A stretch of DNA of 64,000 bases, taken from the NCBI RefSeq assembly GCF_947568905.1, contig NC_079170.1, forward strand, positions 36,022,001-36,086,000. Direction: 5' to 3'. A program made the position numbers and the translations under genes. Below are positions 21,348 through 34,070 of the stretch, piece by piece; position 1 is the stretch's first letter, and every line of letters starts with the position of its first letter. The notes under the pieces are model-generated. The model had not been told where the DNA came from and ran no database searches. It worked only from the letters and a program-made list of their open reading frames with translations. This DNA is from Ostrea edulis (Eukaryota).

Positions 21348-24300
21348 CTACAAAGTAAAAATAACTTTTCCATACTTATCGTCGTGTTTCTGTTCGAATT
21401 TCCCGATGTGTCCCTCAAGCATTAATTCCTGTAAACAACGAAATGAAGCATTAATAATGATCATTATCCAAAATGTCCCTCAAGCATTAATTCCTGTAAA
21501 CAACGAAATGAAGCATTAATAATAATCATTATCCAATGTGTCCCTCAAGCATTAATTCCTGTAAACAACGAAATGAAGCATTAATAATAATCATCATCCA
21601 ATATGCCCCTCAAACATTAATTCCTGTAAAGAACGAAATGAAGCATTAATAATAATCATTATCCAATATGTCCCTCAAGCATTAATTCCTGTAAACAACG
21701 AAATGAAGCATTAATAATAATCATTATCCAATGTGTCCCTCAAGCATTAATTCCTGTAAACAACGAAATGAGGCATTAATAATAATCATCATCCAATGTG
21801 TCCCTCAAGCATTAATTCCTGTAAACAACGAAATGAAGCATTAATAATAATCATTATCCAATGTGTCCCTCAAGCATTAATTCCTGTAAACAACGAAATG
21901 AAGCATTAATAATAATCATCATCCAATGTGTCCCTCAAGCATTAATTCATGTAAACGACGAAATGAAGCATTAATAATAATCATTATCCAATATGTCCCT
22001 CAATCATTAATTCCTGTAAACAACGAAATGAGGCATTAATAATAATCATCATCCAATGTGTCCCTCAAGCATCAATTCCTGTAAACAACGAAATGAAGCA
22101 TTAATAATAATCATCATCCAATATGTCCCTCAATCATTAATTCATGTAAACGACGAAATGAAGCATTAATAATAATCATTATCCAATGTGTCCCTCAATC
22201 ATTAATTCCTGTAAACAACGAACAACGAAATGAAGCATTAATAATAATCATTATCCAATGTGTCCCTCAAGCATTAATTCCTGTAAACAACGAAATGAGG
22301 CATTAATAATGATCATTATACAATATGTCCCTCAAGCATTAATTCCTGTAAACAACGAAATGAGGCATTAATAATAATCATCACCCAATATGCCTCTCAA
22401 ACATCAATTCCTGTAAACAACGAAATGAGGCATTAATAATAATCATTATCCAATATGTCCCCCAAGGATCAATTCCTGTAAACAACGAAATGAAGCATTA
22501 ATAATAATCATTATCCAATATGTCTCTCAAGCATTAATTCCTGTAAACAACGAAATGAGGCATTAATAATAATCATCATCCAATGTGTCCCTCAATCATT
22601 AATTCATGTAAACGACGAAATGAAGCATTAATAATAATCATTATCCAATATGTCTCTCAAGCATTAATTCCTGTAAACAACGAAATGAGGCATTAATAAT
22701 AATCATTATCTAATATGTCCCTCAAGCCCTCCTGTAAACAACGAAATGAAGCATTAATGATAATCATTTTCCAATGTGTCCCTCAAATATCAATTCCTGT
22801 AAACAACGAAATGAAGACGATCATACCAACTATTTACAATATGTATTATCCAATACGCCTGTTTCGAGATACGAACTCTTCTGTATAGGAGGTGCATTTA
22901 GTGGAACTTTGAATGCCTAGGTGGGGCAGAGTGGATATACAGCCAACGAGGAAAACGATGAAATGTATTAAAAGCGGCTTCTCTTTAAATATGTAAATGT
23001 TTTACCGAAGTGGAAACATACAAACAATGTCATATTTGCAAGAAATATCTTGTATATGGTACTTATGACCAGCGAAATAATGTGATAGGATAAAAATTCT
23101 ATGTATTTTATTACTCCCTAAATACTTATCACTTACTTAGTTTGTGTATCAGTCGAATTCGGGTTATCAAACAACGTATGAGAAACTTTCTGAGTACATT
23201 CACTTACGCTGTGATGAATATATCAGTCCCACTCCCGCGTGTAAACAAATTCTTTCGCGCCTTACTATGTACGAGAGTTCTCCAAAGGGAAATAACTCGG
23301 ACGTATCTCGAAACCGGCGTATTGTTTATCAGTAGAATAATTATTGCTTCTTTCCTCATAATTTCTCTGATTTGGCTGTTTCACGGCACTGTACGTTGAT
23401 TTTGCAGCTAATGCGCTGTCTTTATTCATGTACATGGTATAAGTGGAATTTTTAGCGAGACACAAATTTGGCGATTTTTCCATAAAATGGGTATAGATAT
23501 TTAGCGAGAGCTATTTTTAGCGACTTTAAAGTTTCAAGAGACCTGCTACCTCCAATATGGAATTATTTGTTAGCCATATTTGATTTTAGCGATCTTAACA
23601 CTCTCACTAATAATGCCAAAATTCTTCGTAGAATGGGTAGTTTGAGTTTAAGTGGTATTTTACTTACGTGCAGAATGAAGATTATGAGTTTTACTTACGC
23701 ACATCATGAGAAATTTGATGTTTTCTGATGTGCATAATGAATAATTTGTGTTCAAGTTTTGTTTTCCTTATGCGCATAATAAATAATGTGAGTTTTGGTG
23801 TTGTTTTACTTACGTGCATAATGAGTAACGTGAGTTTATGAGCAAGGTCAGCGGGGAGTCCTGAAAATAATGAGATTACAGTGAAACCTCTTTATTCCCA
23901 CATTCATTAGGAAACAAGTTTTGCTTCAGGTTAGATAGGTTGCCAGTTTTGCATAGTTTTACACATTCATGAATAAAACACAATTAAAGTTTAAATGGAT
24001 TGTACCAGTGTCGGGATAGGAAGGGTTCACTGTACATTTAAAAAGAATATCAAATCTATAGAATCAAGATTTTAGCAATATTTCAGTCCAACAATGGATT
24101 AGAGTTAATAGTTATCAATTCTAACATAAGTATTTAGATACAATAGAAATTAGTACAAAACTAGAAACTACTTATTTGAAAAACGACTACAATGTATATA
24201 TCCTGATTAGACTATGAATGGCTACATAATGCTTATATCCTACTTAGACTTTGAATGAAGCCTATTCCCTGTTGCTGGAATATGGTGTGTGTGAGGCTGT

Positions 24301-27300
24301 GACTTTGAACAGCACCCAACACTCTGCGGATTATCTCTTTCTTGTCCTCTGACAGCTGTTGAAAGGCTGGACTACTCAATATAGAATGCTGAAGGAAATT
24401 GTCATTGTCCCTTTTACCGAGTGGACCCTGAAAGGGATCAATAATATTTAAAATATAACTGTTAAAAGTTGAAGTTAACAGTGATCAATCTCGTGAGTCT
24501 TACGATTTATTAAAAATCATAATCCCGTAATGGACAAAGGCAAAGACACCTGATCCCACTTCTGGTGTGTTCGTGTTTGTCGTACTCTTGATTTTGTATT
24601 TTTTGTCGGAATTACGAGATTGACCACTGTTCGTTATCAATGTGTTTGTTACAAAATATCCGATAAGGATGAAGATAACAATCAGTGAAGATGCAACGTG
24701 TTGTACGATTACGGCTTTATACATTGCGGAGAAGACACACACGCACATAAATATGTTTTACGGATGGCGATCATTCCAATCAATCATTCAAACAGTGTGG
24801 TACAGCAGAGATTAAATTATCACTGCTCTAAATCAAGGACGTGTGTTCTGTAAATACCCCATTGTTTACTCTTGTAAATATAGGCACATGCCAAAGTCAT
24901 TAAGTAGATAGCTGTTCACGATCTTGAAACATAAAAAAAAACGTGCGGGAAACTTAGTAGTATGTATTGCTTGAGTGATGGTTAGGTGGGGGAATTGTCC
25001 CCTTCTGTTCAACACTCTGAGTTCATACCATCATAATCTGTGGTGTTAGGTCCCGCGATGTGTAATAGACACGTACTTGTGATTTAGGGGTTTTATCTAG
25101 TGTGAATACGGTGACTGGGTATTGACAATTGTTTATCTCGACCACCTACCGTTCATTTCCACCACTCGTTGTCAAGATACCCACAGTGCCTACCGCCACA
25201 ACTTCTGGTTTATCAAATACTCACATTCACTGCCTACCGCCACAACCTGTGGTTTATCAAATACTCACAGTCACTGTGCCTACCGCCACAACTTGTGGTT
25301 TATCAAATACTCACAGTCACTGTGCCTACCGCCACAACTTGTGGTTTATCAAATACTCACAGTCACTGTGCCTACCGCCACAACTTGTGGTTTATCAAAT
25401 ACTCACAGTCACTGTGCCTACCGTCACAACCTGTGGTTAATTGAATACTTACAGTGTCTACCGCCACAACTTGTGGTTAATTGAATACTTACAGTGCCTA
25501 CCGCCACAACTTGTGGTTAATTGAATACTTACATTGCCTACTGCCACAACTTGTGGTTAATTGAATACTTACAGTGCCTACCGCCACAACTTGTGGTTTA
25601 TTGAATACTTACATTGCCTACTGCCACAACTTGTGGTTAATTGAATACTTACAGTGTCTCCCGTCACAACTGGTGGTTAATTGAATACTTACAGTGCCTA
25701 CCGCCACAACTTGTGATTTATCAAATACTTACAGTGCCTACCACTACAACTTGTGGTTTATTGAATACTTACAGTGCCTACCGCCACAACTTGTGGTTAA
25801 TTGAATACTTACAGTGCCTACCGCCACAACTTGTGGTTTATTGAATACTTACAGTGCCTACCGCCACAACTTGTGGTTTATTGAATACTTACAGTGACTA
25901 CTGCCACAACTTGTGGTTTATTGAATACTTACAGTGACTACTGCCACAACTTGTGGTTAATTGAATACTTACAGTGCCTACAGCCACAACTTGTGGTTTA
26001 TTGAATACTTACATTGCCTACTGCCACAACTTGTGGTTTATTGAATACTTACAGTGACTACTGCCACAACTTGTGGTTAATTGAATACTTACAGTGCCTA
26101 CAGCCACAACTTGTGGTTTATTGAATACTTACATTGCCTACTGCCACAACTTGTGGTTAATTGAATACTTACAGTGCCTACCGCCACAACCTGTGGTTAA
26201 TTGAATACTTACAGTGTCTACCGCCACAACTTGTGGTTAATTGAATACTTACAGTGCCTACCGCCACAACTTGTGGTTAATTGAATACTTACAGTGCCTC
26301 CAGCCACAACTTGTGGTTAATTGAATAGTTACAGTGCCTACCGCCACAACTTGTGGTTAATTGAATACTTACATTGCCTACTGCCACAACTTGTGGTTAA
26401 TTGAATAATTACAGTGTCTACTGCCACATCTTGTGGTTAATTGAATACTTACAGTACCTACTGCCACAACCTGTGGTTAATTGAATACTTACAGTGCCTA
26501 CCGCCACAACTGGTGGTTTATTGAATACTTACATTGCCTACTGCCACAACTTGTGGTTAATTGAATAATTACAGTGTCTACTGCCACATCTTGTGGTTAA
26601 TTGAATACTTACAGTACCTACTGCCACAACCTGTGGTTAATTGAATACTTACAGTGCCTACCGCCACAACTGGTGGTTTATTGAATACTTACAGTGCCTA
26701 CTGCCACAACTTGTGGTTTGGGAGTTGTGGTTGTCGTTGTTGTCGTCGTCGTTGTCGTCGTTGTTGAGGTTGTTGTTGTTTTGCTGTATTCCATCTCCAT
26801 GTGCTAATCACAGAAATAATTTATGTATCGATTAAAATACTGTAGAATTGCAAATTAATGTCTTGTTATTGTTTATTTGTGTGTTTTGTAAACACCCCAT
26901 TCGAGATGTTTATTTCAATCACGGATAGACGTTACCATCTTTAGGTAAATTGCCAAAACGCTTGGCCTATTGATGGCGCTTATTGCCGTAACAGTAAAAT
27001 TTGTTTTCATCATGCCAACACCTACCACCTTATTTAATCTCATATCCGAAAGAACCGTAACTGACTTCAAATACCACATGATTGGCAGAGGAATAGTCAC
27101 TGCCTATGTCAAACGTGTTAGGTTTGCAAGACACCCAGAATGAGATTCTTCCAGTTGCAAAGCGAGCGCACGAACTAAGCTACTGCTCACTTGGTATAGG
27201 ACCACCACGAAACTACGAGAAGTAGTATTCAACGGAAGCTGATCAAATCACCGTATTTTCATGTACAACCTTTTCCAACGACAGCTTACATCTAATACCA

Positions 27301-27762
27301 AATATGTTGATACATGTACATCTTACCATGAGTAGATAGGACTCCAGGCTTTTCTGTTGTATGGATGTTCCAACTGCATTAAACGAAGAGTAAATAGTCA
27401 AATACATTAATACGAAAGATCAGTGTAGCGACTAAATTTATTTCTTATATGAAATGCCAGCCTTAAAATGGATAATAAACTTTGCCAATCAATTTCAGAC
27501 AGAATTGAATGATATAAAAAAGAACCTGACCACTTAAAGCCAGAAGTACTTTTAAAAATCCTTTATCGTCGACATAACGAACAAGGACACCATTTTCAGC
27601 TGCTGCCACCAACTCCACAATGGTGAGCTGGGTATCAGCTGGCAGGGTATGAAAACCTGGGTCCTTGTGAATAAGTCCCAGTATTTCCAGTAAGTCGCGC
27701 TTGTTGTTATCACACAATGCCACAGACAGCGATAAGATGAAAATATACCCAACTGTCTTCAT
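21348..27762 (-). CDS. Gene A: secreted protein with signal peptide, two ~60-aa helical repeats, a Thr-rich linker and KR/GKR sites (217 or 233 aa); family not recognised
   Basis: Coding exons: 27762-27531 (MKTVGYIFILSLSVALCDNNKRDLL...KVLLALS, phase 1), 27373-27327 (47 nt), 26803-26693 (HMEMEYSK, T-rich tract, PKPQVVAVGT), 24427-24244 (GPLGKRDND...GFIQSL, phase 1), 23860-23814 (47 nt, RLPADLAHKLTLLIMH). Terminal exon is either 22796-22764 (ELIFEGHIGK*) or 21428-21348 (ELMLEGHIGKFEQKHDDKYGKVIFTL*). All junctions are GT-AG with matching phases, and both domains use the same phase-1/47-nt/phase-0 exon pattern as gene B. A 5' UTR exon ends at 28241 (CAG/GTATGT). Confidence 0.8.
21408..22816 (-). 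repeat. 65-nt tandem array (22 units) made of gene A's last-intron acceptor plus the start of the exon
   Basis: Minus-strand unit: ataatgattattattaatgcttcatttcgttgtttacAG/GAATTAATGCTTGAGGGACACATTGG. Confidence 0.92.
23655..23830 (-). repeat. About 5 decayed tandem copies of gene A's exon-6 end plus donor
   Basis: Plus-strand acttacgtgca-like motifs near 23660, 23693, 23725, 23766 and 23808 (the last is the real donor). Confidence 0.65.
25170..26718 (-). repeat. 40-nt (and 46-nt variant) tandem array, ~38 units, made of gene A's exon-4 end plus donor
   Basis: Minus-strand unit: accacaagttgtggcggtaggcact/GTAAGTattcaatta; the 46-nt units carry GTGAGT. Contains the palindrome ccacaacttgtgg. Confidence 0.95.
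26895..27200 (-). mobile_element. Decayed tRNA-head SINE in a gene A intron
   Basis: tcatatccgaaagaaccgt and catgccaacacctacc are the reverse complement of the body seen at 16.9 and 57.5 kb. Confidence 0.6.
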
Positions 27763-28656
27763 TTTGTTCCTACGTAAAAGCAAATGTACATGTATTTATA
27801 AAGTGAACATTTTCCAATCTGAAATGCAGTGGGAGACTAGTAGTGATATCGTATCGGATTAAACAGGTTGCCAGATTGTAAAGCTTGAAGTTCATGAAAT
27901 ATAATTTATAGTAAATATGGGATCGGAGAATGCAGTGAAACAAGGGAGTCGGATTGGATCATGATTCACTGCAAACTCCAACGTCGTTTAGAAGTTTCGG
28001 CAACTTTGAAACTGTTATCAACATGCTTTTATGGTACCCCTGGAAGTGCATGTTTTGTTATCACTAAGTTTTAGACTTACAATTCAAATTTGTGATTGTT
28101 CAGAAAAGAAAAGTTTGAAAACACAATGACTATGTCACGTAGATGATATACGAAAACCAGGTAGCCGTAAATATTGAAATGTCAATAAACTTCTCCATAC
28201 TATGTCTACTCGTATATAAATATATATAGAGGACACATACCTGTTGGTGCCCAAGCTCTGTTGAAATACTGGCACGGTCTGAGATAAGGTAAAGGTGCAC
28301 TACAATCTTATCATGTGATAAGTCATGATCATGACATCATGTGAGTATCGGTACATGACGACCATGAAGACATGTAGAGTAGGCCAATCTAGATATCAGC
28401 AAATTTATTATTTGCTCCTTTTCTTTACGTTTTATATTGAGCCACAATTGCTTGTTTATTTCAGGTAATCATGTTATTGCAGAAAATTACATTTGTCAAA
28501 TGAGGGAGCATTGGACCACTATAGATTTTTATTGTTAAGCTTCTCTTCTCCCGACTTCTCACCCACTTGTTTTAACACTATCATATAGGACAAACATTAT
28601 TTTGAAGATGAATAATCTTGCCAACAACTTAACATCTTGTATTCATTAAATGTTCA

Positions 28657-28990
28657 TGAAAGAAATTGACGATAACGAACAGCGACCTATGTTATACATT
28701 CTATAAAGAATACACAATTTTAGAGAAGGGCAACAAAGGACCTCTGGACACACCAAAAGTGAGATCAGGTGCACTGGAAGAGTAAATATCTCATGTTGAC
28801 CGGTTACATCATTTGCTAGCCCTATATCTTGATCAGATAAGCGGAGTGATCTGTAGTCAAAATCAATGTGTAAAGAACGGCTGAACAATTGATATGAAAC
28901 ACGTCAGACAGCATTCAACCTAATGACAGACTGCTTTTTCAAATAAGATCTTTACAACGACCATAGAATTTGCAAATTGCTGACTTTAAA
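28657..28990 (-). mobile_element. Penelope-like 3' fragment
   Basis: gataacgaacag...tcttgatcag...gtagtcaaaatc...cacgtcagacagcatt, diverged. Confidence 0.8.
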
Positions 28991-29099
28991 ATATAATATA
29001 TCACGGATGATGATAATGATGATAATAATCTTCATGATGAAAACCTCCATTAGGCTAATCCTTTTCCAAATGAAATATGTACAACGATTTACAATATAC

Positions 29100-29395
29100 G
29101 CTATTGGTCCCGAGGAGATCCGGGTTAGAATAGGTCCGCAGTACCCCCTTGCTTGTCGCAAGAGGCGGCTAAATGGGGCTGTGCTTAGGATGGGACCGCA
29201 AAAACCGAGGCCCCATGTCACAGCAGGTGTGGCACGATAAAGATCCCTCCCTGCTCAAAGGCCGTGAGCGCCGAGCATGGGCGTATATTTTGCAGCCCCT
29301 CGCCGACAATCAAGACGTCTCCGTATGAGTGAATTTTTTTCGAGAGGGATGTTAAAACAATACACAACCCACCCACTAACCAATATAAGCTATTG
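29100..29395 (+). mobile_element. SINE with a conserved central domain (possibly Meta-type), head truncated
   Basis: gttagaataggtccgcagtacccccttgcttgtcgcaagaggcggctaaatgg followed by ggcacgataaagatccctccctgctc; domain name assigned from memory. Confidence 0.65.
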
Positions 29396-29461
29396 TATTC
29401 TGAATCATTTGTGGAAGCAAACTGTAGATACATGTAAAACGTATACGGTACCAATTTTAAT

Positions 29462-29505
29462 GCACCAGATGCGCATTTCGACAAATAATGTCTCTTCAGT
29501 GATGC
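29462..29505 (-). ncRNA. Type I hammerhead ribozyme, minimal stem III variant
   Basis: GCAUCA CUGAAGA GAC-auuauuu-GUC GAAA UGCGCA UC/UGGUGC: full catalytic core, 6-bp stem I, 3-bp stem II, palindromic stem III loop, AUC cleavage triplet. Confidence 0.85.
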
Positions 29506-29949
29506 TCAACCGAAAGTTTTGAAATCCGAAATAACAATAAACTTTTAAGAGTACAGGACTAGGCATGGTAATGCTAATTTCCTTCTGATATTTTTATGTA
29601 TTTCATTGCATGTTATAAATCGTCTTACTAGGTGTTGGCTATTGAGTATACGTTGTCATTAGTTCGAATTCCGCATACCTGTCCACCTCTACTATTGTTT
29701 ATACAATTTCTCACCGGATGACACCTAACATCACGTGATTTACTACACTGTAACCTGTTCACAACTTCAGTGCGAATTCTTAACAGACAACGTCATATAG
29801 TAAATAAGTAGGTAACCGAGGTCTTTATGACCAATTTCATCTGGACGTACATGTACATGTACCGAGTTTTGGTTTGAGCGCAATCCTCTTCAGATCAACT
29901 GGTCCTTTTCTCAAAGACTGTCCTGTTTTTATCAGATTAGCGGTCTCTG

Positions 29950-30001
29950 AGGGTCACAGTCCCCGGTCACTATCAGTTAAAGCCTCAGAATCGACACGAG
30001 G
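29950..30001 (+). other. Probable non-coding first exon of gene B (start approximate)
   Basis: Ends GAGG/GTAAGT at 30001/30002; the next acceptor (32261-32262) lies 14 nt before gene B's ATG. Confidence 0.5.
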
Positions 30002-31299
30002 GTAAGTACTCTTTGGATTTCTGATATTTAAAAGATTGAAGTAAAGGTATGGTAGAGAAAGTTATGAGCAAACCTGCATAAATTTATGAATTTGAATGAA
30101 TTGCATTATTATATGTACAAATGCATAACAGTGTATATCAGTCCCTCAAGATTTAATAATAATCAATACAATGTATAAATAATCAAAAAGAAAGTCGTCA
30201 TTTACTAATCAGTCGATCAAATGCAAAGAGCTCGGGCATGCATGCTTTAGTATTATCATATCACGCAGTGTAACATCTATTGTATTTTTTTTACAATTTA
30301 GAATCGTAAATTGTTAATTTCTAAGTAACCAAAGTGCATGTCGAAATTAAAAACAGATGTGTACATGTATATGTGACTTACGGCTTTCGTTGTACAAAAC
30401 ATGAGTTATTTTAATGGCCGATCAGCTTTCCATAACATACATGTATTAGTTTTGTAAAATCCATACAAAAGAGCGGTCCCGAGGGTAAAAAACCTATGGG
30501 GGATTTTACGATATAGTAGCTCCCTCGAGTTGGGGAAACTACTATACAGCCAATTTTCCAAGGGAAGAGTTAAAAAATAACTATTCTTCTACCTCATCCA
30601 GTCAGTGACCTCCGTCATCAGGTTGACTATTTTGCCGCGTTAGGGTGTGCGCGTTACAATTTGGAATTTAAAACATTAAAATTAGTAATCTACAGTTAGA
30701 AAGAACAGTCTGAGATTTACTTAATGGTTTTGTCACAGTAACTGAGTCTTGAAGGAATCAGGATTTGGCGCCAGCACAGTTGAGATGGGCAAGATATTCC
30801 ATTCTTTGATATCCTATGCAACACAAGCTCTTAACGAGAGAACAGTGGTTGTTTTGTAATATTTAACGTATTGTTCGACGCGGCACTGAGATCGATAATA
30901 AACCCCCACCCCCTCCAGTTGAGAAGCGATCGCTCTAAGTATTCAAACATCGATTAAGTTCTATTTTTGTCTTTTGATAATAAATCGGAATCGCTTCGTA
31001 TGGGTGGTTTTTTTTATTTGGTATTCAAATTTTCTACTAATTATTTTTAAAGTCACAACAATGTATAAAGGTTGAAAAGGCGTCTATTCTTTTAAGGAGG
31101 AGGTATTGTAATATAGTATTGTGAATTAGTTTTGCATTTTGCGTCTGATGTAGCCTTGCGCTGTACGGCTATAGCTTCACCGAAACATTGAATACTATTC
31201 TCCTGGAATCAAACACTGAACACGTGTCTGTAAGAATGAATTATGATTGAAGATGAACCTTTTTTGAAATGATAATGAAATACATGAAACGGTGAAAAT

Positions 31300-31975
31300 T
31301 GATCAATGAAAGGCGAAGATAACGTACACTGACAATCGCATAACTTCTATAAGGAATACAAAATAGAGATTAGGGCAAACACGAACCCCTGGTCACACCA
31401 GCGGTACGTGTAGTGCATACATCGTGTAACACTTAACTTGTGTTTAACCTTTGATTGTTTTTCATATTCTTATGATCTTAATAAATTGACTAATTAAGGA
31501 AATTTGCATCTTACTGGAAATTTGGTACAGGTTAATATTTTTAATGTATTTACAAAATTCTTCTAGGTGATATTTCAAAACCCCGAGATAGATTGCTATG
31601 TAATTGTAATTTGAATTGAAAATTTTCTTGCCAAAGTTAAGGAAATATATGAGAATCTCAGAATTTACAAAATTAAGAGTAGGACAATCACGGACTCCAT
31701 GGACAGAGGTGGGATAAAGTGTCTAGGGGGATTAAGTATCCCCTGTTGACCGGTCACACCCGCCGTTAGCTCTATACCTTTATCAGGTGAAAGGAGAATA
31801 CGTTGTCAATTTAGTATGTAAAGAACGGCCTAACAATTGGTATGAAACATGTCAGACTGCATTCGACCTAATGGCAGGCTGTATGTGTAAAATTATATCG
31901 TTATAATGACCATAGAATTTGCGAAATGTTGACTTTAAGCGGACTTATTTGTCAGTAGACCGCCTCGATTATATT
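31300..31975 (-). mobile_element. Two Penelope-like 3' fragments (31300-31410 and 31675-31975)
   Basis: gaagataacg...gggcaaacacgaacccctgg; accggtcacacccgcc...aacggcctaacaattggtatgaaacatgtcag. Confidence 0.8.
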
Positions 31976-32276
31976 AATTCGAATTTCAGATCACGAGTTT
32001 CCTTTAGAGTACATCTAACCGACTTCTGTGTTACAATGGCAATATATTTACAAAATTAAGTAGTTTTCGTTTCTTGTTTGACGTATTAGATATCGATTTA
32101 TCGTGAAATTAACAAAACAAGTGTAAGAATTTCAAAAGTATCTTTTGATGTTGATTACAAAGCATAATGAAAACAACAGTGACAAGATTTCTGTTAATGA
32201 CATTGTTTCATCGCTAATATCCAAAGGAGTACTAAAATTGCAATACTTCCTGATTTTCGTAGAACACATTCTCGGG

Positions 32277-34070
32277 ATGAAGACCCTAATTCTGTCAATG
32301 CTGGTGGGTGTCTGCTTTGCTGGTCTCGTGGTGAGTGTTTCTATTTTCTCCAAAGTGGTATTATCAAGACGGCTCAACATAGGTTAAGCAAAATTGGTAA
32401 ATTATTTATGTTTTCCCAGAATGTCGACAGAAACAAATTTAATAAAACATTTCTTTATGTTCTTATTTATCAAAACCTAGTGAGGAAAAAAATTCACAGG
32501 AACTTGTTGATAATCTTTTTCCATATATAATCGTGACGGAATATTTCCCCTCGTAAAAACTCTATCAACAAGGAAAACACAATCACCCCTTCTTCGTCTC
32601 CATCATTTCTACCCTTTCACTAAGTATGATGTTGCTTTTATCAATCTGTACTTAATTTCTTTCTAATTCATTTTTACTTGATGTGGAATACATGTATCTT
32701 TTTTTCTTGTCGATGAAATATTTTGTAATTCTGTTAATGAATGAATAATGATTGATACAAGTTTTAAAACCGTTATGATTTCTGTATGAAAACGCCCGTT
32801 TTTCCTGGCCTTTGTACTTTAGTTTTATGTTAGATTGTCTCTGGTTTTATTATCTATTTCTTGTATGTCAGGAGATTTGTTTCCGTAGGTCGTGAGTTCA
32901 ACCCCGGGTAAGGGCAAAAGTGGGCATCCATTTCTTTTTTAAGATACATGTATATCTGTGCTTTATGTTACTTAGGATATTTATGTCTACGTAATAGTTT
33001 ATAAGTTTTATGAAGCAAATGTAAAATCAAGCAATTTAGGAAGATATGTTTATTTTGTATTAATTGCTTTAAATCGAGATGTTTCCCTCAGTTTACGTTA
33101 CGAATGTGATATACCATGTGCTTGTAAAAGTCATAGTTTATCCAGGGGGTGATATGTCCCACGTGATTGGGACAAACACAAGCTTCTTTTTAGGAACGCG
33201 ATACTCTAGACGCTTTGAAACAACTTCATCTCACCAACTTCATGACCACTTTGACAACAGACCAACAGCTCTTATTGATTGACATAGTAGCCCAGGCAGA
33301 CGCCGGAACTCTGACGGACTTCACAAACACGATCGGGTATTCCAGGATACTAGAAATCTTTATCGGTGGGTAATGTTTTCACAATGTATCCAGGCAGGTG
33401 CTTTCTATATCATAACATTGAAAACTATCGTTATCATCATCAATGTCTTAAAAGAAAATGATTTCTCAGTCTTTTCGTTAATTTAGATCCCAGATGTACA
33501 TGTATTAAGCGTGATCCGTTGTAGACATGTTTTATGTCCGTTTTATCAAAATCACATTTACAGCCCTAAGTGCTGACGATGAAAGAATCTTCAAGAATTA
33601 TATTATACAGGTAAGTTCTCAGATCACCTTTGATTCAGATAATTATTGTGATTATGGGATCACATACATACTAAACTTTGTGATATTGATTATGGGATTA
33701 CACACATAACATTGTATATTAATTATGGGATTAAACACATAACACTGTGATATTGACTATGGGATTAGACACATAACATTGTGATATTGATTATGGGATC
33801 ACATACATACTAAACATTGGGATATTTCTTTTGATTGTGGGATTACACAAGTACATACCACTATGCTATTTCTTTTGACCAGAAAAAAGAAATAAATATA
33901 CAATTTGTCGTATCCCTTACACTTTCATCCTTCACATTTTGTCGACACAGATTCTACAGTTATTTGTCTAGAATATACTAATTATATTACACTGGTTTCA
34001 GCGATTAACATTAGAGGCACAGGGTCCAATAAATGCACATCATGGTGTCGCTACAGGACACGGAAAATGA
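32277..34070 (+). CDS. Gene B: 113-aa secreted paralog of gene A with one helical domain
   Basis: Exons 32277-32330 (MKTLILSMLVGVCFAGLV, GTGAGT), 33194-33365 (ERDTLDALKQ...LTTDQQLLLIDIVAQADAGTLTDFTNTIGYSRILEIFI, phase 1), 33564-33610 (47 nt, ALSADDERIFKNYIIQ, GTAAGT), 34002-34070 (RLTLEAQGPINAHHGVATGHGK*). Exons 2-3 are missed by the ORF track. Confidence 0.85.
33640..33860. repeat. Degenerate ~33-nt minisatellite in a gene B intron
   Basis: tgtgatattgattatgggattacacacataaca x~7. Confidence 0.8.

What the first reader, a model, noticed from the sequence alone, without database searches (positions are those of the whole stretch)
21348..34070. Head-to-head pair of an unrecognised secreted helical-repeat family (genes A and B)
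Seen: three copies of a ~60-aa domain align without gaps over the core: A1 PGFHTLPADTQLTIVELVAAAENGVLVRYVDDKGFLKVLLAL, A2 PAFQQLSEDKKEIIRRVLGAVQSHSLTHTIFQQQGIGFIQSL, B NFMTTLTTDQQLLLIDIVAQADAGTLTDFTNTIGYSRILEIF. Each is followed by a phase-1 intron, a 47-nt exon and a phase-0 intron. The mature parts are Cys-free; in gene A both domains follow KR or GKR (gene B has ER at that position). Known: KR is a prohormone-convertase site and GKR adds amidation. Inference: a lineage-specific family of processed amphipathic-helical effectors (defence, lipid-binding or shell/mucus proteins), almost invisible to ORF callers.
Basis: partly seen in the sequence, partly recalled or inferred. Interest (0 to 1): 0.72.

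Follow-up and report, generated by a model that had tools for sequence, protein, structure and literature searches.

The report
Orphan mollusc secreted helical-module gene pair
Two neighbouring flat-oyster genes, read in opposite directions, encode small secreted cysteine-free proteins built from an ~88-residue helical module; the family occurs across bivalves and snails, has no name or known function, and is a real but fairly ordinary orphan family.

Summary
The window is Ostrea edulis chromosome DNA. Gene A (minus strand, 6 exons, 233 aa) and gene B (plus strand, 4 exons, 113 aa) are intact GT-AG models that start 4.5 kb apart, head to head. Their three domain exons are homologous. Each is followed by a phase-1 intron, a 47-nt exon and a phase-0 intron.

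Gene B is already RefSeq XP_048743449.2 ("uncharacterized"). The A/B pair, exon for exon, is conserved in Magallana gigas and Crassostrea virginica, where A is called as a 224-aa gene. dN/dS is about 0.07-0.13.

A profile of the domain finds about 65 relatives among 1.84 billion proteins. All named ones are from bivalves or gastropods and all are "uncharacterized". No Pfam family, solved structure or paper matches.

AlphaFold gives a compact six-helix module (pLDDT 83.5). Two-module proteins look like beads joined by a disordered linker that usually carries KR/RR.

The most likely reading is a secreted polyprotein cut by proprotein convertases into ~10-kDa modules. Half-conserved His/Glu columns and HH tails suggest metal binding. 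Function and O. edulis transcripts remain untested, because no RNA run was available.

The claim "invisible to ORF callers" is overstated, and "helical repeat" really means independent globular modules.

The parts
27531..27762 (-). Gene A exon 1. ATG at 27762, a signal-like peptide (MKTVGYIFILSLSVALC), DNNKR, then helices 1-5 of module 1. Ends in phase 1.
   Evidence: 84% nt identity and dN/dS 0.13 against an Ostrea-like metagenome contig, with intron 1 unalignable. 67-71% aa identity to M. gigas and C. virginica.
27327..27373 (-). Gene A exon 2, 47 nt. Start of the last helix of module 1. Phase 1 in, phase 0 out.
   Evidence: 87-93% aa identity in Crassostrea and Magallana. Conserved as an island between diverged introns.
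26693..26803 (-). Gene A exon 3. End of module 1 (HMEMEYSK), a poly-Thr linker and PKPQVVAVGT.
   Evidence: 69% identity to Pinctada P0010 residues 93-128. 92% identity to Crassostrea and Magallana.
25183..26718 (-). 40-nt satellite of about 38 copies. Each copy repeats the end of exon 3 plus its GTAAGT donor. Lies in intron 3.
   Evidence: Absent from the M. gigas and C. virginica orthologues.
24244..24427 (-). Gene A exon 4. GPLGKR, then helices 1-5 of module 2. Ends in phase 1.
   Evidence: Conservation starts and stops exactly at the splice sites against a Logan oyster contig, dN/dS 0.11. 72% aa identity in Crassostrea and Magallana.
23814..23860 (-). Gene A exon 5, 47 nt. Start of the last helix of module 2.
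   Evidence: 87-93% aa identity in Crassostrea and Magallana.
21409..22816 (-). 65-nt satellite of about 22 copies. Each copy repeats the last exon's acceptor and first codons, and each reads ELMLEGHIG-stop. Lies in intron 5 and overlaps the start of the true last exon.
   Evidence: Absent from the Crassostrea and Magallana orthologues.
21348..21428 (-). Gene A last exon (ELMLEGHIGKFEQKHDDK...TL, then stop).
   Evidence: The ELMLEGH.GK...HDD tail is conserved in C. virginica and M. gigas.
27763..32276 (.). 4.5-kb spacer between the two divergent start codons.
   Evidence: The same head-to-head layout has spacers of 4.05 kb in M. gigas and 2.9 kb in C. virginica.
32277..32330 (+). Gene B exon 1. 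Signal-like peptide MKTLILSMLVGVCFAGLV.
   Evidence: Identical to P0009 residues 1-18.
33194..33365 (+). Gene B exon 2. ERD, then helices 1-5 of the module. Ends in phase 1.
   Evidence: 67-68% aa identity in Crassostrea and Magallana.
33564..33610 (+). Gene B exon 3, 47 nt.
34002..34070 (+). Gene B exon 4. RLTLEAQGPINAHHGVATGHGK, then stop. This is the most conserved part of B.
   Evidence: 21 of 21 aa identical to M. gigas while about half of the synonymous sites differ (pN 0.00, pS 0.48).

Best explanation
Genes A and B are a divergently transcribed pair of paralogues in Ostrea edulis. They belong to an unnamed family found in bivalves and gastropods.

What the family looks like:
- Its proteins carry a signal-like N-terminus and one to three copies of an ~88-residue, Cys-free module.
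- The module is predicted to fold into a compact bundle of six helices.
- Each module is encoded by three exons: a domain exon, then a phase-1 intron, a 47-56-nt micro-exon, a phase-0 intron and a tail exon.

Shown here: the gene models, their homology, the conserved pairing, purifying selection, the predicted fold, and the bead-and-linker architecture.

Inferred: the proteins enter the secretory pathway, and proprotein convertases cut multi-module precursors such as A at the K/R-R sites in the disordered linkers. In A these sites are DNNKR|D and GPLGKR|D. In A and some bivalve relatives the Gly before the site would then be turned into a C-terminal amide. The products would be free ~10-kDa helical modules. 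I put processing at about 0.55.

Most likely biochemical role, as inference only (about 0.3): reversible binding of divalent metal ions (Zn, Cu, Ni) in an extracellular fluid. The candidate ligands are four half-conserved His columns, six acidic columns, and the HH-containing flexible tail that follows most modules.
For: Gene models:
- All junctions are GT-AG and the frames close at 702 and 342 nt.
- B equals RefSeq XP_048743449.2 residue for residue.
- A's exons are collinear with the Pinctada fucata protein A0A194AMB2. A neighbouring accession of that series maps to a transcriptome assembly, GELH01 (PMC11355117).

Conservation:
- The pair and all ten exons are conserved in M. gigas and C. 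virginica, where A is called as a 224-aa gene.
- Exons are conserved and introns are not.
- dN/dS is 0.07-0.13.

Family:
- The profile search gave 73 hits, about 65 of them credible. Named hits come from Saccostrea, Magallana, Crassostrea, Pinctada, Mytilus, Mizuhopecten, Ylistrum, Mya, Potamilus, Haliotis, Littorina, Batillaria, Gigantopelta and Aplysia.
- O. edulis has only five domain exons.
- The chromosome-6 paralogue has the same three-exon module plan.

Structure:
- The single module has pLDDT 83.5 and six helices.
- The two-module protein has pLDDT 77.5 and pTM 0.48. Its linker, which holds the GRR site, has pLDDT below 50.

Processing and composition:
- K/R-R occurs before 13 of 22 internal modules. 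Several exceptions are truncated models.
- KR/RR is conserved in four oysters.
- Mature proteins are Cys-free with 4-10% His.
- His is the commonest residue in alignment columns 15, 64, 74 and 83. Columns 28, 34, 40, 63, 72 and 87 are acidic.
- The weak fold hits recur on metal-sensor or chaperone helical proteins (CnrXs four times, Metal_resist, LTXXQ).
Against: - No transcript evidence for O. edulis itself. No RNA run holds the locus and the four runs laid on it are DNA.
- No full-length gene A product from O. edulis appears among the profile hits, so A may be unannotated there.
- A's two splice-site satellites could disturb its splicing.
- Signal peptides were judged by eye, because no SignalP was available.
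- Mytilus linkers have a single Arg (KLRDL), so dibasic cutting is not universal.
- O. edulis B lacks three of the four His columns.
Confidence: 0.6

Rival explanations
1. Prohormone, neuropeptide or pheromone precursor. Convertases cut the precursor, and the released modules, or their strongly conserved tails such as B's LTLEAQGPINAHHGVATGHG, act as receptor ligands.
For: - Signal-like peptide plus K/R-R sites, with Gly before the site in A and several bivalve relatives.
- Many family members end in Gly or Gly-Lys.
- B's 21-residue tail is invariant between Ostrea and Magallana while synonymous sites diverge.
Against: - The conserved units are ~88-residue folded bundles, not short peptides framed by cleavage sites.
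- B's C-terminal residue after the Gly varies (K, Q, NK), so amidation is not conserved.
- No cleavage site precedes B's tail other than a single Arg.
- No match to any named neuropeptide family in Pfam.
Confidence: 0.18
2. Carrier of lipids or other hydrophobic ligands. This would be a functional analogue of nematode polyprotein allergens: tandem small helical units cut at dibasic sites, each holding a fatty acid or retinoid.
For: - The overall logic is the same: a secreted Cys-free helical unit of about 10-15 kDa, in tandem copies, with dibasic linkers.
- ABA-1A appears among the Foldseek rows (rank 10).
Against: - The ABA-1A hit has E=7.5 and TM 0.23, so it is not evidence.
- Most family members have only one or two units.
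- A six-helix bundle of 80 residues leaves little room for a cavity. I could not inspect the coordinates to check.
Confidence: 0.1
3. Structural or matrix component of shell, mucus or egg coat. The modules would be held in place through the O-glycosylated poly-Thr linker and metal cross-links between His residues.
For: - The poly-Thr mucin-like linker in A is conserved in Pinctada, Crassostrea and Magallana.
- His-rich tails are common in the family.
Against: - Only the A lineage has the Thr linker.
- Searches for the family's sequences and accessions found no paper.
- Matrix proteins are usually low-complexity. These are well-folded small domains under strong purifying selection.
Confidence: 0.08
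4. Gene A is decaying or mis-spliced in O. edulis. About 38 decoy donors follow exon 3 and about 21 decoy acceptors, each with a stop, precede the last exon. Together they might abolish the normal product.
For: - Both arrays exist and are absent from the Crassostrea and Magallana orthologues.
- No full-length O. edulis A protein appears among the profile hits.
Against: - All six exons are intact, in frame and canonical.
- An upstream decoy acceptor would still give a near-normal protein ending ELMLEGHIG.
- Exon 1 shows dN/dS 0.13 against a closer Ostrea-like contig.
Confidence: 0.12

Closest known systems
Uncharacterized RefSeq/UniProt proteins of the same family (O. edulis XP_048743449.2, Pinctada fucata A0A194AMB2, Saccostrea echinata XP_061181506.1, Mytilus A0A8B6GV93, Mya XP_052780486.1, several Haliotis XP entries)
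   Same: - XP_048743449.2 is gene B itself.
- A0A194AMB2 is the collinear two-module orthologue of A, with the same poly-Thr linker and GKR site.
- All share the ~88-aa module.
   Different: None has a name, a domain assignment or any experimental work. The family as such is undescribed.
Pfam DUF4476 (PF14771), the N-terminal domain of the spiralian ciliary protein lophotrochin
   Same: - About 90 residues long.
- UniRef labels one Mytilus family member 'DUF4476 domain-containing protein'.
- DUF4476 does occur in spiralians (PMC7441323).
   Different: - The current PF14771 model hits none of the 35 modules or the full-length members scanned, even at E of 10 or below.
- It does not ring at these loci in a genome scan.
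- From my own knowledge, not from the paper, lophotrochin is not a secreted protein.
Nematode polyprotein allergens (ABA-1 type)
   Same: Works alike in outline: a secreted precursor of tandem small Cys-free helical units separated by dibasic cleavage sites.
   Different: - No sequence similarity and no significant fold similarity (Foldseek E=7.5).
- One to three units here, against about ten in the nematode proteins.
- Lipid binding is untested.
Periplasmic metal sensors and chaperones of the CnrX / ZraP / CpxP-Spy (LTXXQ, Metal_resist) group
   Same: Small all-helical extracytoplasmic proteins rich in His and Glu. They recur among the weak structural neighbours.
   Different: - The matches are below significance (E of 5-9, TM 0.3-0.49).
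- They are bacterial.
- No sequence match.
MgtE_N / FliG-type armadillo-like helical domains
   Same: These give the best sub-threshold sequence hits. MgtE_N matches 4 of 35 modules, with best E 0.0017. FliG chains and designed ARM proteins appear in the PDB search at E of 0.004-0.65.
   Different: - All are below the curated cut-off (at most 21 bits against 25.9).
- They are cytoplasmic proteins.
- The structure search did not return them.

Membership tests
The unnamed mollusc module family itself (defined here by alignment A2) | ~88-residue module with the consensus L..L...H....F..L....K.LLvEL..AAE...LT.YI...G[FY]..[IV]L.LL.H(L)....A...F..YL..HL..E | tested here: met
   A profile that lacks both A domains finds A1 at E=9.6e-11 and A2 at E=0.012. 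It finds B at 2.8e-11, but B is one of the profile's own rows.
The unnamed mollusc module family itself | Signal-like N-terminus and Cys-free mature protein | tested here: met
   The signal peptide was judged from the hydrophobic N-terminus only, because no SignalP was available.
The unnamed mollusc module family itself | Three exons per module (domain exon, phase 1; micro-exon, phase 0; tail exon) | tested here: met
   A modules 1 and 2 and B, the chromosome-6 paralogue, and the M. gigas and C. virginica orthologues.
Pfam DUF4476 (PF14771) | Match to the PF14771 HMM at or above 22.5 bits | tested here: not met
   No hit at E of 10 or below for the exon peptides, 35 modules or the full-length relatives scanned. 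The genome scan with the HMM gives no hit at these loci.
Pfam DUF4473 (PF14747, nematode secreted proteins) | Match to the PF14747 HMM at or above 25.9 bits | tested here: not met
   It is the nearest cluster by language-model features for two members, but only at 0.77-0.80, which is lead level. hmmscan gives no hit. The genome scan gives no hit at these loci.
Neuropeptide / prohormone precursors | Signal peptide plus mono- or dibasic convertase sites | tested here: met
   KR and GKR in A, conserved as K/R-R in four oysters. 13 of 22 internal junctions across the family carry such a site.
Neuropeptide / prohormone precursors | Short conserved bioactive peptides framed by cleavage sites; conserved amidation Gly | tested here: not met
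   The conserved units are ~88-aa folded modules. Gly before the site is present in only 3 of 22 junctions, and B's C-terminus varies.
Neuropeptide / prohormone precursors | Expression in neurons or endocrine cells; peptides detected by mass spectrometry | not testable with these tools
   No RNA run was found for this locus.
Nematode polyprotein allergens | Sequence or fold homology to the ABA-1 unit; lipid binding | tested here: not met
   Foldseek E=7.5, TM 0.23. There is no sequence hit. Lipid binding cannot be tested here.
MgtE_N / FliG helical domains | Match at or above the Pfam cut-off (25.9 bits) | tested here: not met
   Best hit is 21.3 bits, E=0.0004 on one full-length protein. 4 of 35 modules match at E of 0.0017 or weaker.

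The most novel reading that the evidence does not exclude
The module family is a set of convertase-processed ~10-kDa helical proteins, shared by bivalves and gastropods. The proteins bind and move Zn or Cu in body fluids, or act as long amidated hormones or pheromones. Either way it would be a previously unseen class of extracellular metal chaperone or signal, in animals known for extreme metal accumulation.
Probability: 0.25. Interest if true: 0.6.

Novelty: new variant of a known kind. Interest (0 to 1): 0.4.

Why it matters
The result defines a clean domain family that so far exists only as scattered 'uncharacterized protein' entries. The family spans bivalves and gastropods and is under strong purifying selection. 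The report supplies a module alignment, an exon plan, a confident fold model and concrete hypotheses to test: convertase processing and His-based metal binding.

For oyster biology it adds candidates for extracellular metal handling or signalling. For annotation it gives the full six-exon model of gene A in O. edulis, which did not appear among the database proteins. It is still one of many orphan secreted families, and no function has been shown.

Tried and rejected
1. Pfam scans of exon peptides, 35 modules and the full-length relatives gave no family.

2. I could not reproduce the UniRef label DUF4476. The language-model lead DUF4473 was not reproduced either.

3. The profile search against PDB sequences gave only sub-threshold ARM, FliG and serpin rows.

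5. An ORF at 27104-27232(-) reads ...ALQLEESHSG and looks like a module tail. I first took it for exon 3. I rejected it because no AG lies in phase 0 before it and the stretch is not conserved in the Ostrea-like contig. The true exon 3 is 26803-26693.

6. The search for RNA runs found none. The four holders are DNA. Laying them on gene B showed contiguous genomic contigs and no joints.

7. The word search with Pinctada P0010 returned only itself, probably because poly-Thr words swamped it.

8. Literature searches by accession, LOC number and peptide strings gave no paper on the family.

9. Looking up gene B's own record was blocked, because records of this genome are withheld.

A was searched exon by exon, and database proteins (P0009, P0010 and others) stood in for full-length context.
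Full report
**Organism and place.** The window is G000:C7:36022001-36086000 of an 895-Mb, 52-contig assembly. Gene B's product is letter for letter RefSeq XP_048743449.2, "uncharacterized protein LOC125656869 [Ostrea edulis]". The genome is therefore the European flat oyster.

**Checking the observation.** I fixed the exon ends by string search.
- Gene A (-): 27762-27531, 27373-27327, 26803-26693, 24427-24244, 23860-23814, 21428-21348.
- Gene B (+): 32277-32330, 33194-33365, 33564-33610, 34002-34070.

All junctions are GT-AG. The coding lengths are 702 and 342 nt, both multiples of three. Each domain exon ends in phase 1, each following exon is 47 nt long, and each of those ends in phase 0. 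The finding's limits are the two stop codons.

KR, GKR and ER precede the three domains, and the mature parts have no Cys. After that, domain 2 of A carries a small insertion before the conserved Gly-aromatic pair.

Full-length context came from database proteins.

**Is the similarity more than chance?**
- A1 as a single query finds two further exons on chromosome 6 (E=4.5e-4 and 2.7e-3) and B (E=0.14) in a six-frame scan of the whole genome.
- A profile of 35 modules from other species, which contains neither A domain, finds exactly five exons in the genome. These are the two on chromosome 6 (2e-15, 1e-13), B (3e-11), A1 (1e-10) and A2 (0.012).
- O. edulis therefore has three genes of this family: A (two modules), B (one) and a two-module gene at C6:77.107-77.119 Mb. 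That third gene has the same three-exon plan per module.

**Are they genes?** Four lines of evidence say yes.
1. B is a RefSeq model.
2. A's exons are collinear with Pinctada fucata A0A194AMB2 (232 aa). Exon 1 matches residues 6-71 (55% identity), exon 3 matches 93-128 (69%, including the poly-Thr run), exon 4 matches 133-171 and exon 5 matches 188-201. A neighbouring accession of that UniProt series maps to the transcriptome assembly GELH01 (PMC11355117), so this protein very probably comes from cDNA.
3. In Magallana gigas and Crassostrea virginica the B orthologue (114 and 113 aa) has a 224-aa gene called on the opposite strand, 4.05 kb and 2.9 kb upstream. tblastn places all six A exons and all four B exons there in order. 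The head-to-head pair therefore predates the split between Ostrea and Crassostrea.
4. Against an Ostrea-like metagenome contig and a Logan oyster contig, conservation switches on and off exactly at the splice sites. dN/dS is 0.13 and 0.11 there. It is 0.07-0.10 against Magallana and Crassostrea, where synonymous sites are near saturation.

What is missing is direct RNA evidence from O. edulis. No RNA run holds the locus. The four holders are DNA, and their contigs run straight through B's introns without joints.

**The family.** A profile of the five O. edulis domain exons found 73 proteins at E of 0.001 or below among 1.84 billion. A handful of long repetitive proteins are spurious, because each of their stretches scores E above 0.001.

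Named members are bivalves (Saccostrea, Magallana, Crassostrea, Pinctada, Mytilus, Mizuhopecten, Ylistrum, Mya, Potamilus) and gastropods (Haliotis, Littorina, Batillaria, Gigantopelta, Aplysia). All are "uncharacterized" or "hypothetical".

Two complete three-module proteins sit on contigs of 919 and 1056 nt with uninterrupted ORFs. That is what a transcript would look like.

Members have one to three modules, a hydrophobic N-terminus, no Cys in the mature part and 4-10% His.

**Known families.**
- Pfam gives nothing for the exon peptides, for 35 modules or for the full-length proteins. The best rows are sub-threshold MgtE_N hits.
- UniRef calls one Mytilus member "DUF4476 domain-containing". 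DUF4476 is the N-terminal domain of the spiralian ciliary protein lophotrochin (PMC7441323). The current PF14771 model does not touch any member or these loci.
- The protein-language-model neighbour DUF4473 (0.77-0.80, lead level only) also fails the HMM test.
- No paper contains the accessions, LOC numbers or signature peptides.

**Structure.** With the 35-module alignment, AlphaFold2 folds mature B at pLDDT 83.5 and pTM 0.68. It gives six helices at residues 2-13, 16-19, 22-36, 40-47, 49-58 and 61-79, and the last 16 residues are not helical and score lower (about 60). The domain exon encodes helices 1-5. The 47-nt exon and the tail exon together encode the long last helix.

A two-module protein (Mya arenaria) repeats the same helix pattern twice at pLDDT 77.5 but pTM 0.48. 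Its nine linker residues, which include GRR, fall below pLDDT 50. The modules therefore look like independent beads, not a continuous helical repeat.

**How it probably works.** A K/R-R pair stands just before 13 of 22 internal modules. Several of the exceptions are truncated models, and Mytilus has a single Arg. In the A lineage both sites are conserved: [KR]R-DLLE after the signal peptide and GPLG[KR]R before module 2, in O. edulis, the Ostrea-like contig, M. gigas and C. virginica. These sites sit in predicted disordered linkers of secreted proteins.

The simplest reading is cleavage by furin or PC-type convertases into free ~10-kDa modules. Where Gly precedes the site, C-terminal amidation would follow. 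This is inference from established convertase and PAM specificity, not something shown here. Amidation is not general: gastropod linkers lack the Gly, and B's C-terminus is GHGK, GHGQ or GHGNK in different oysters.

For the biochemical role, the strongest sequence clue is histidine. His is the commonest residue in four alignment columns (15, 64, 74 and 83). Six columns are mostly acidic. Most modules are followed by a flexible tail with an HH pair (sequences).

B has lost three of the four core His but keeps the tail AHHGVATGHG. That tail is invariant over 21 residues between Ostrea and Magallana, while half of the synonymous sites differ.

I therefore rank reversible divalent-metal binding first, at about 0.3. 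The weak structural neighbours recur on CnrX, Metal_resist and LTXXQ proteins, which is consistent with this but carries no weight. Rivals are a hormone or pheromone role, a lipid carrier like the nematode polyprotein allergens, and a matrix component. Each is given with its odds in the rivals section.

**Peculiarity of gene A in O. edulis.** Intron 3 begins with about 38 copies of a 40-nt unit that repeats the end of exon 3 plus its GTAAGT donor. Intron 5 ends with about 22 copies of a 65-nt unit that repeats the last acceptor and the first codons, each reading ELMLEGHIG-stop. Neither array exists in the Magallana or Crassostrea orthologues.

The conserved ...GK...HDD tail shows that the distal copy is the ancestral last exon. 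Whether the decoys change splicing is unknown. They belong to separate findings of this scan.

**Verdict.** This is a real, lineage-restricted, secreted helical-module family with probable convertase processing.
- It is not invisible to annotation.
- It is not a solenoid repeat.
- Its function is open.

I rate it a new domain family within a familiar kind of secreted, dibasic-processed precursor. It is of moderate interest.

Noticed in passing
window 25183-26718 and 21409-22816: Two satellites copy gene A's exon-3 donor (40-nt unit, about 38 copies) and its last acceptor plus first codons (65-nt unit, about 22 copies). Both are missing from the M. gigas and C. virginica orthologues, so they expanded in the Ostrea lineage.
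   Followed up: partly
window 27104-27232 (-): An ORF reading ...ALQLEESHSG mimics a module tail inside intron 2 of gene A. It has no in-phase acceptor and is not conserved in the related contig L015, so it is probably chance.
   Followed up: yes
G000:C6:77106813-77119219 (L002, L003): The third family gene of O. edulis. Signal peptide plus module 1 is one exon. Module 2 lies 12 kb downstream, with its own 56-nt-class micro-exon and a tail exon ending ...HLNKEAAHHSTT. It is the orthologue of Saccostrea echinata XP_061181506.1.
   Followed up: partly
window 34002-34064: B's C-terminal 21 residues (RLTLEAQGPINAHHGVATGHG) are identical in M. gigas, while about half of the synonymous sites differ. 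This is far more conserved than the helical domain, which is 67-68% identical.
   Followed up: partly
window 33295: A G>C difference in contigs of two of the four DNA runs changes codon 34 of B's exon 2 from CAG (Gln) to CAC (His). It looks like a non-synonymous polymorphism (sequence).
   Followed up: no
window 31900-31976 and 32824-32977: Contig depth jumps by 100 to 10,000 times in all four DNA runs. These are high-copy repeats, probably small transposons, just upstream of B and inside its intron 1.
   Followed up: no
window 33649-33809: A 34-nt tandem repeat of 4.6 copies in intron 3 of gene B.
   Followed up: no
Mytilus galloprovincialis A0A8B6GV93 (P0075): UniRef names it 'DUF4476 domain-containing protein', but the current PF14771 model gives no hit at E of 10 or below. 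The label looks outdated or marginal.
   Followed up: yes
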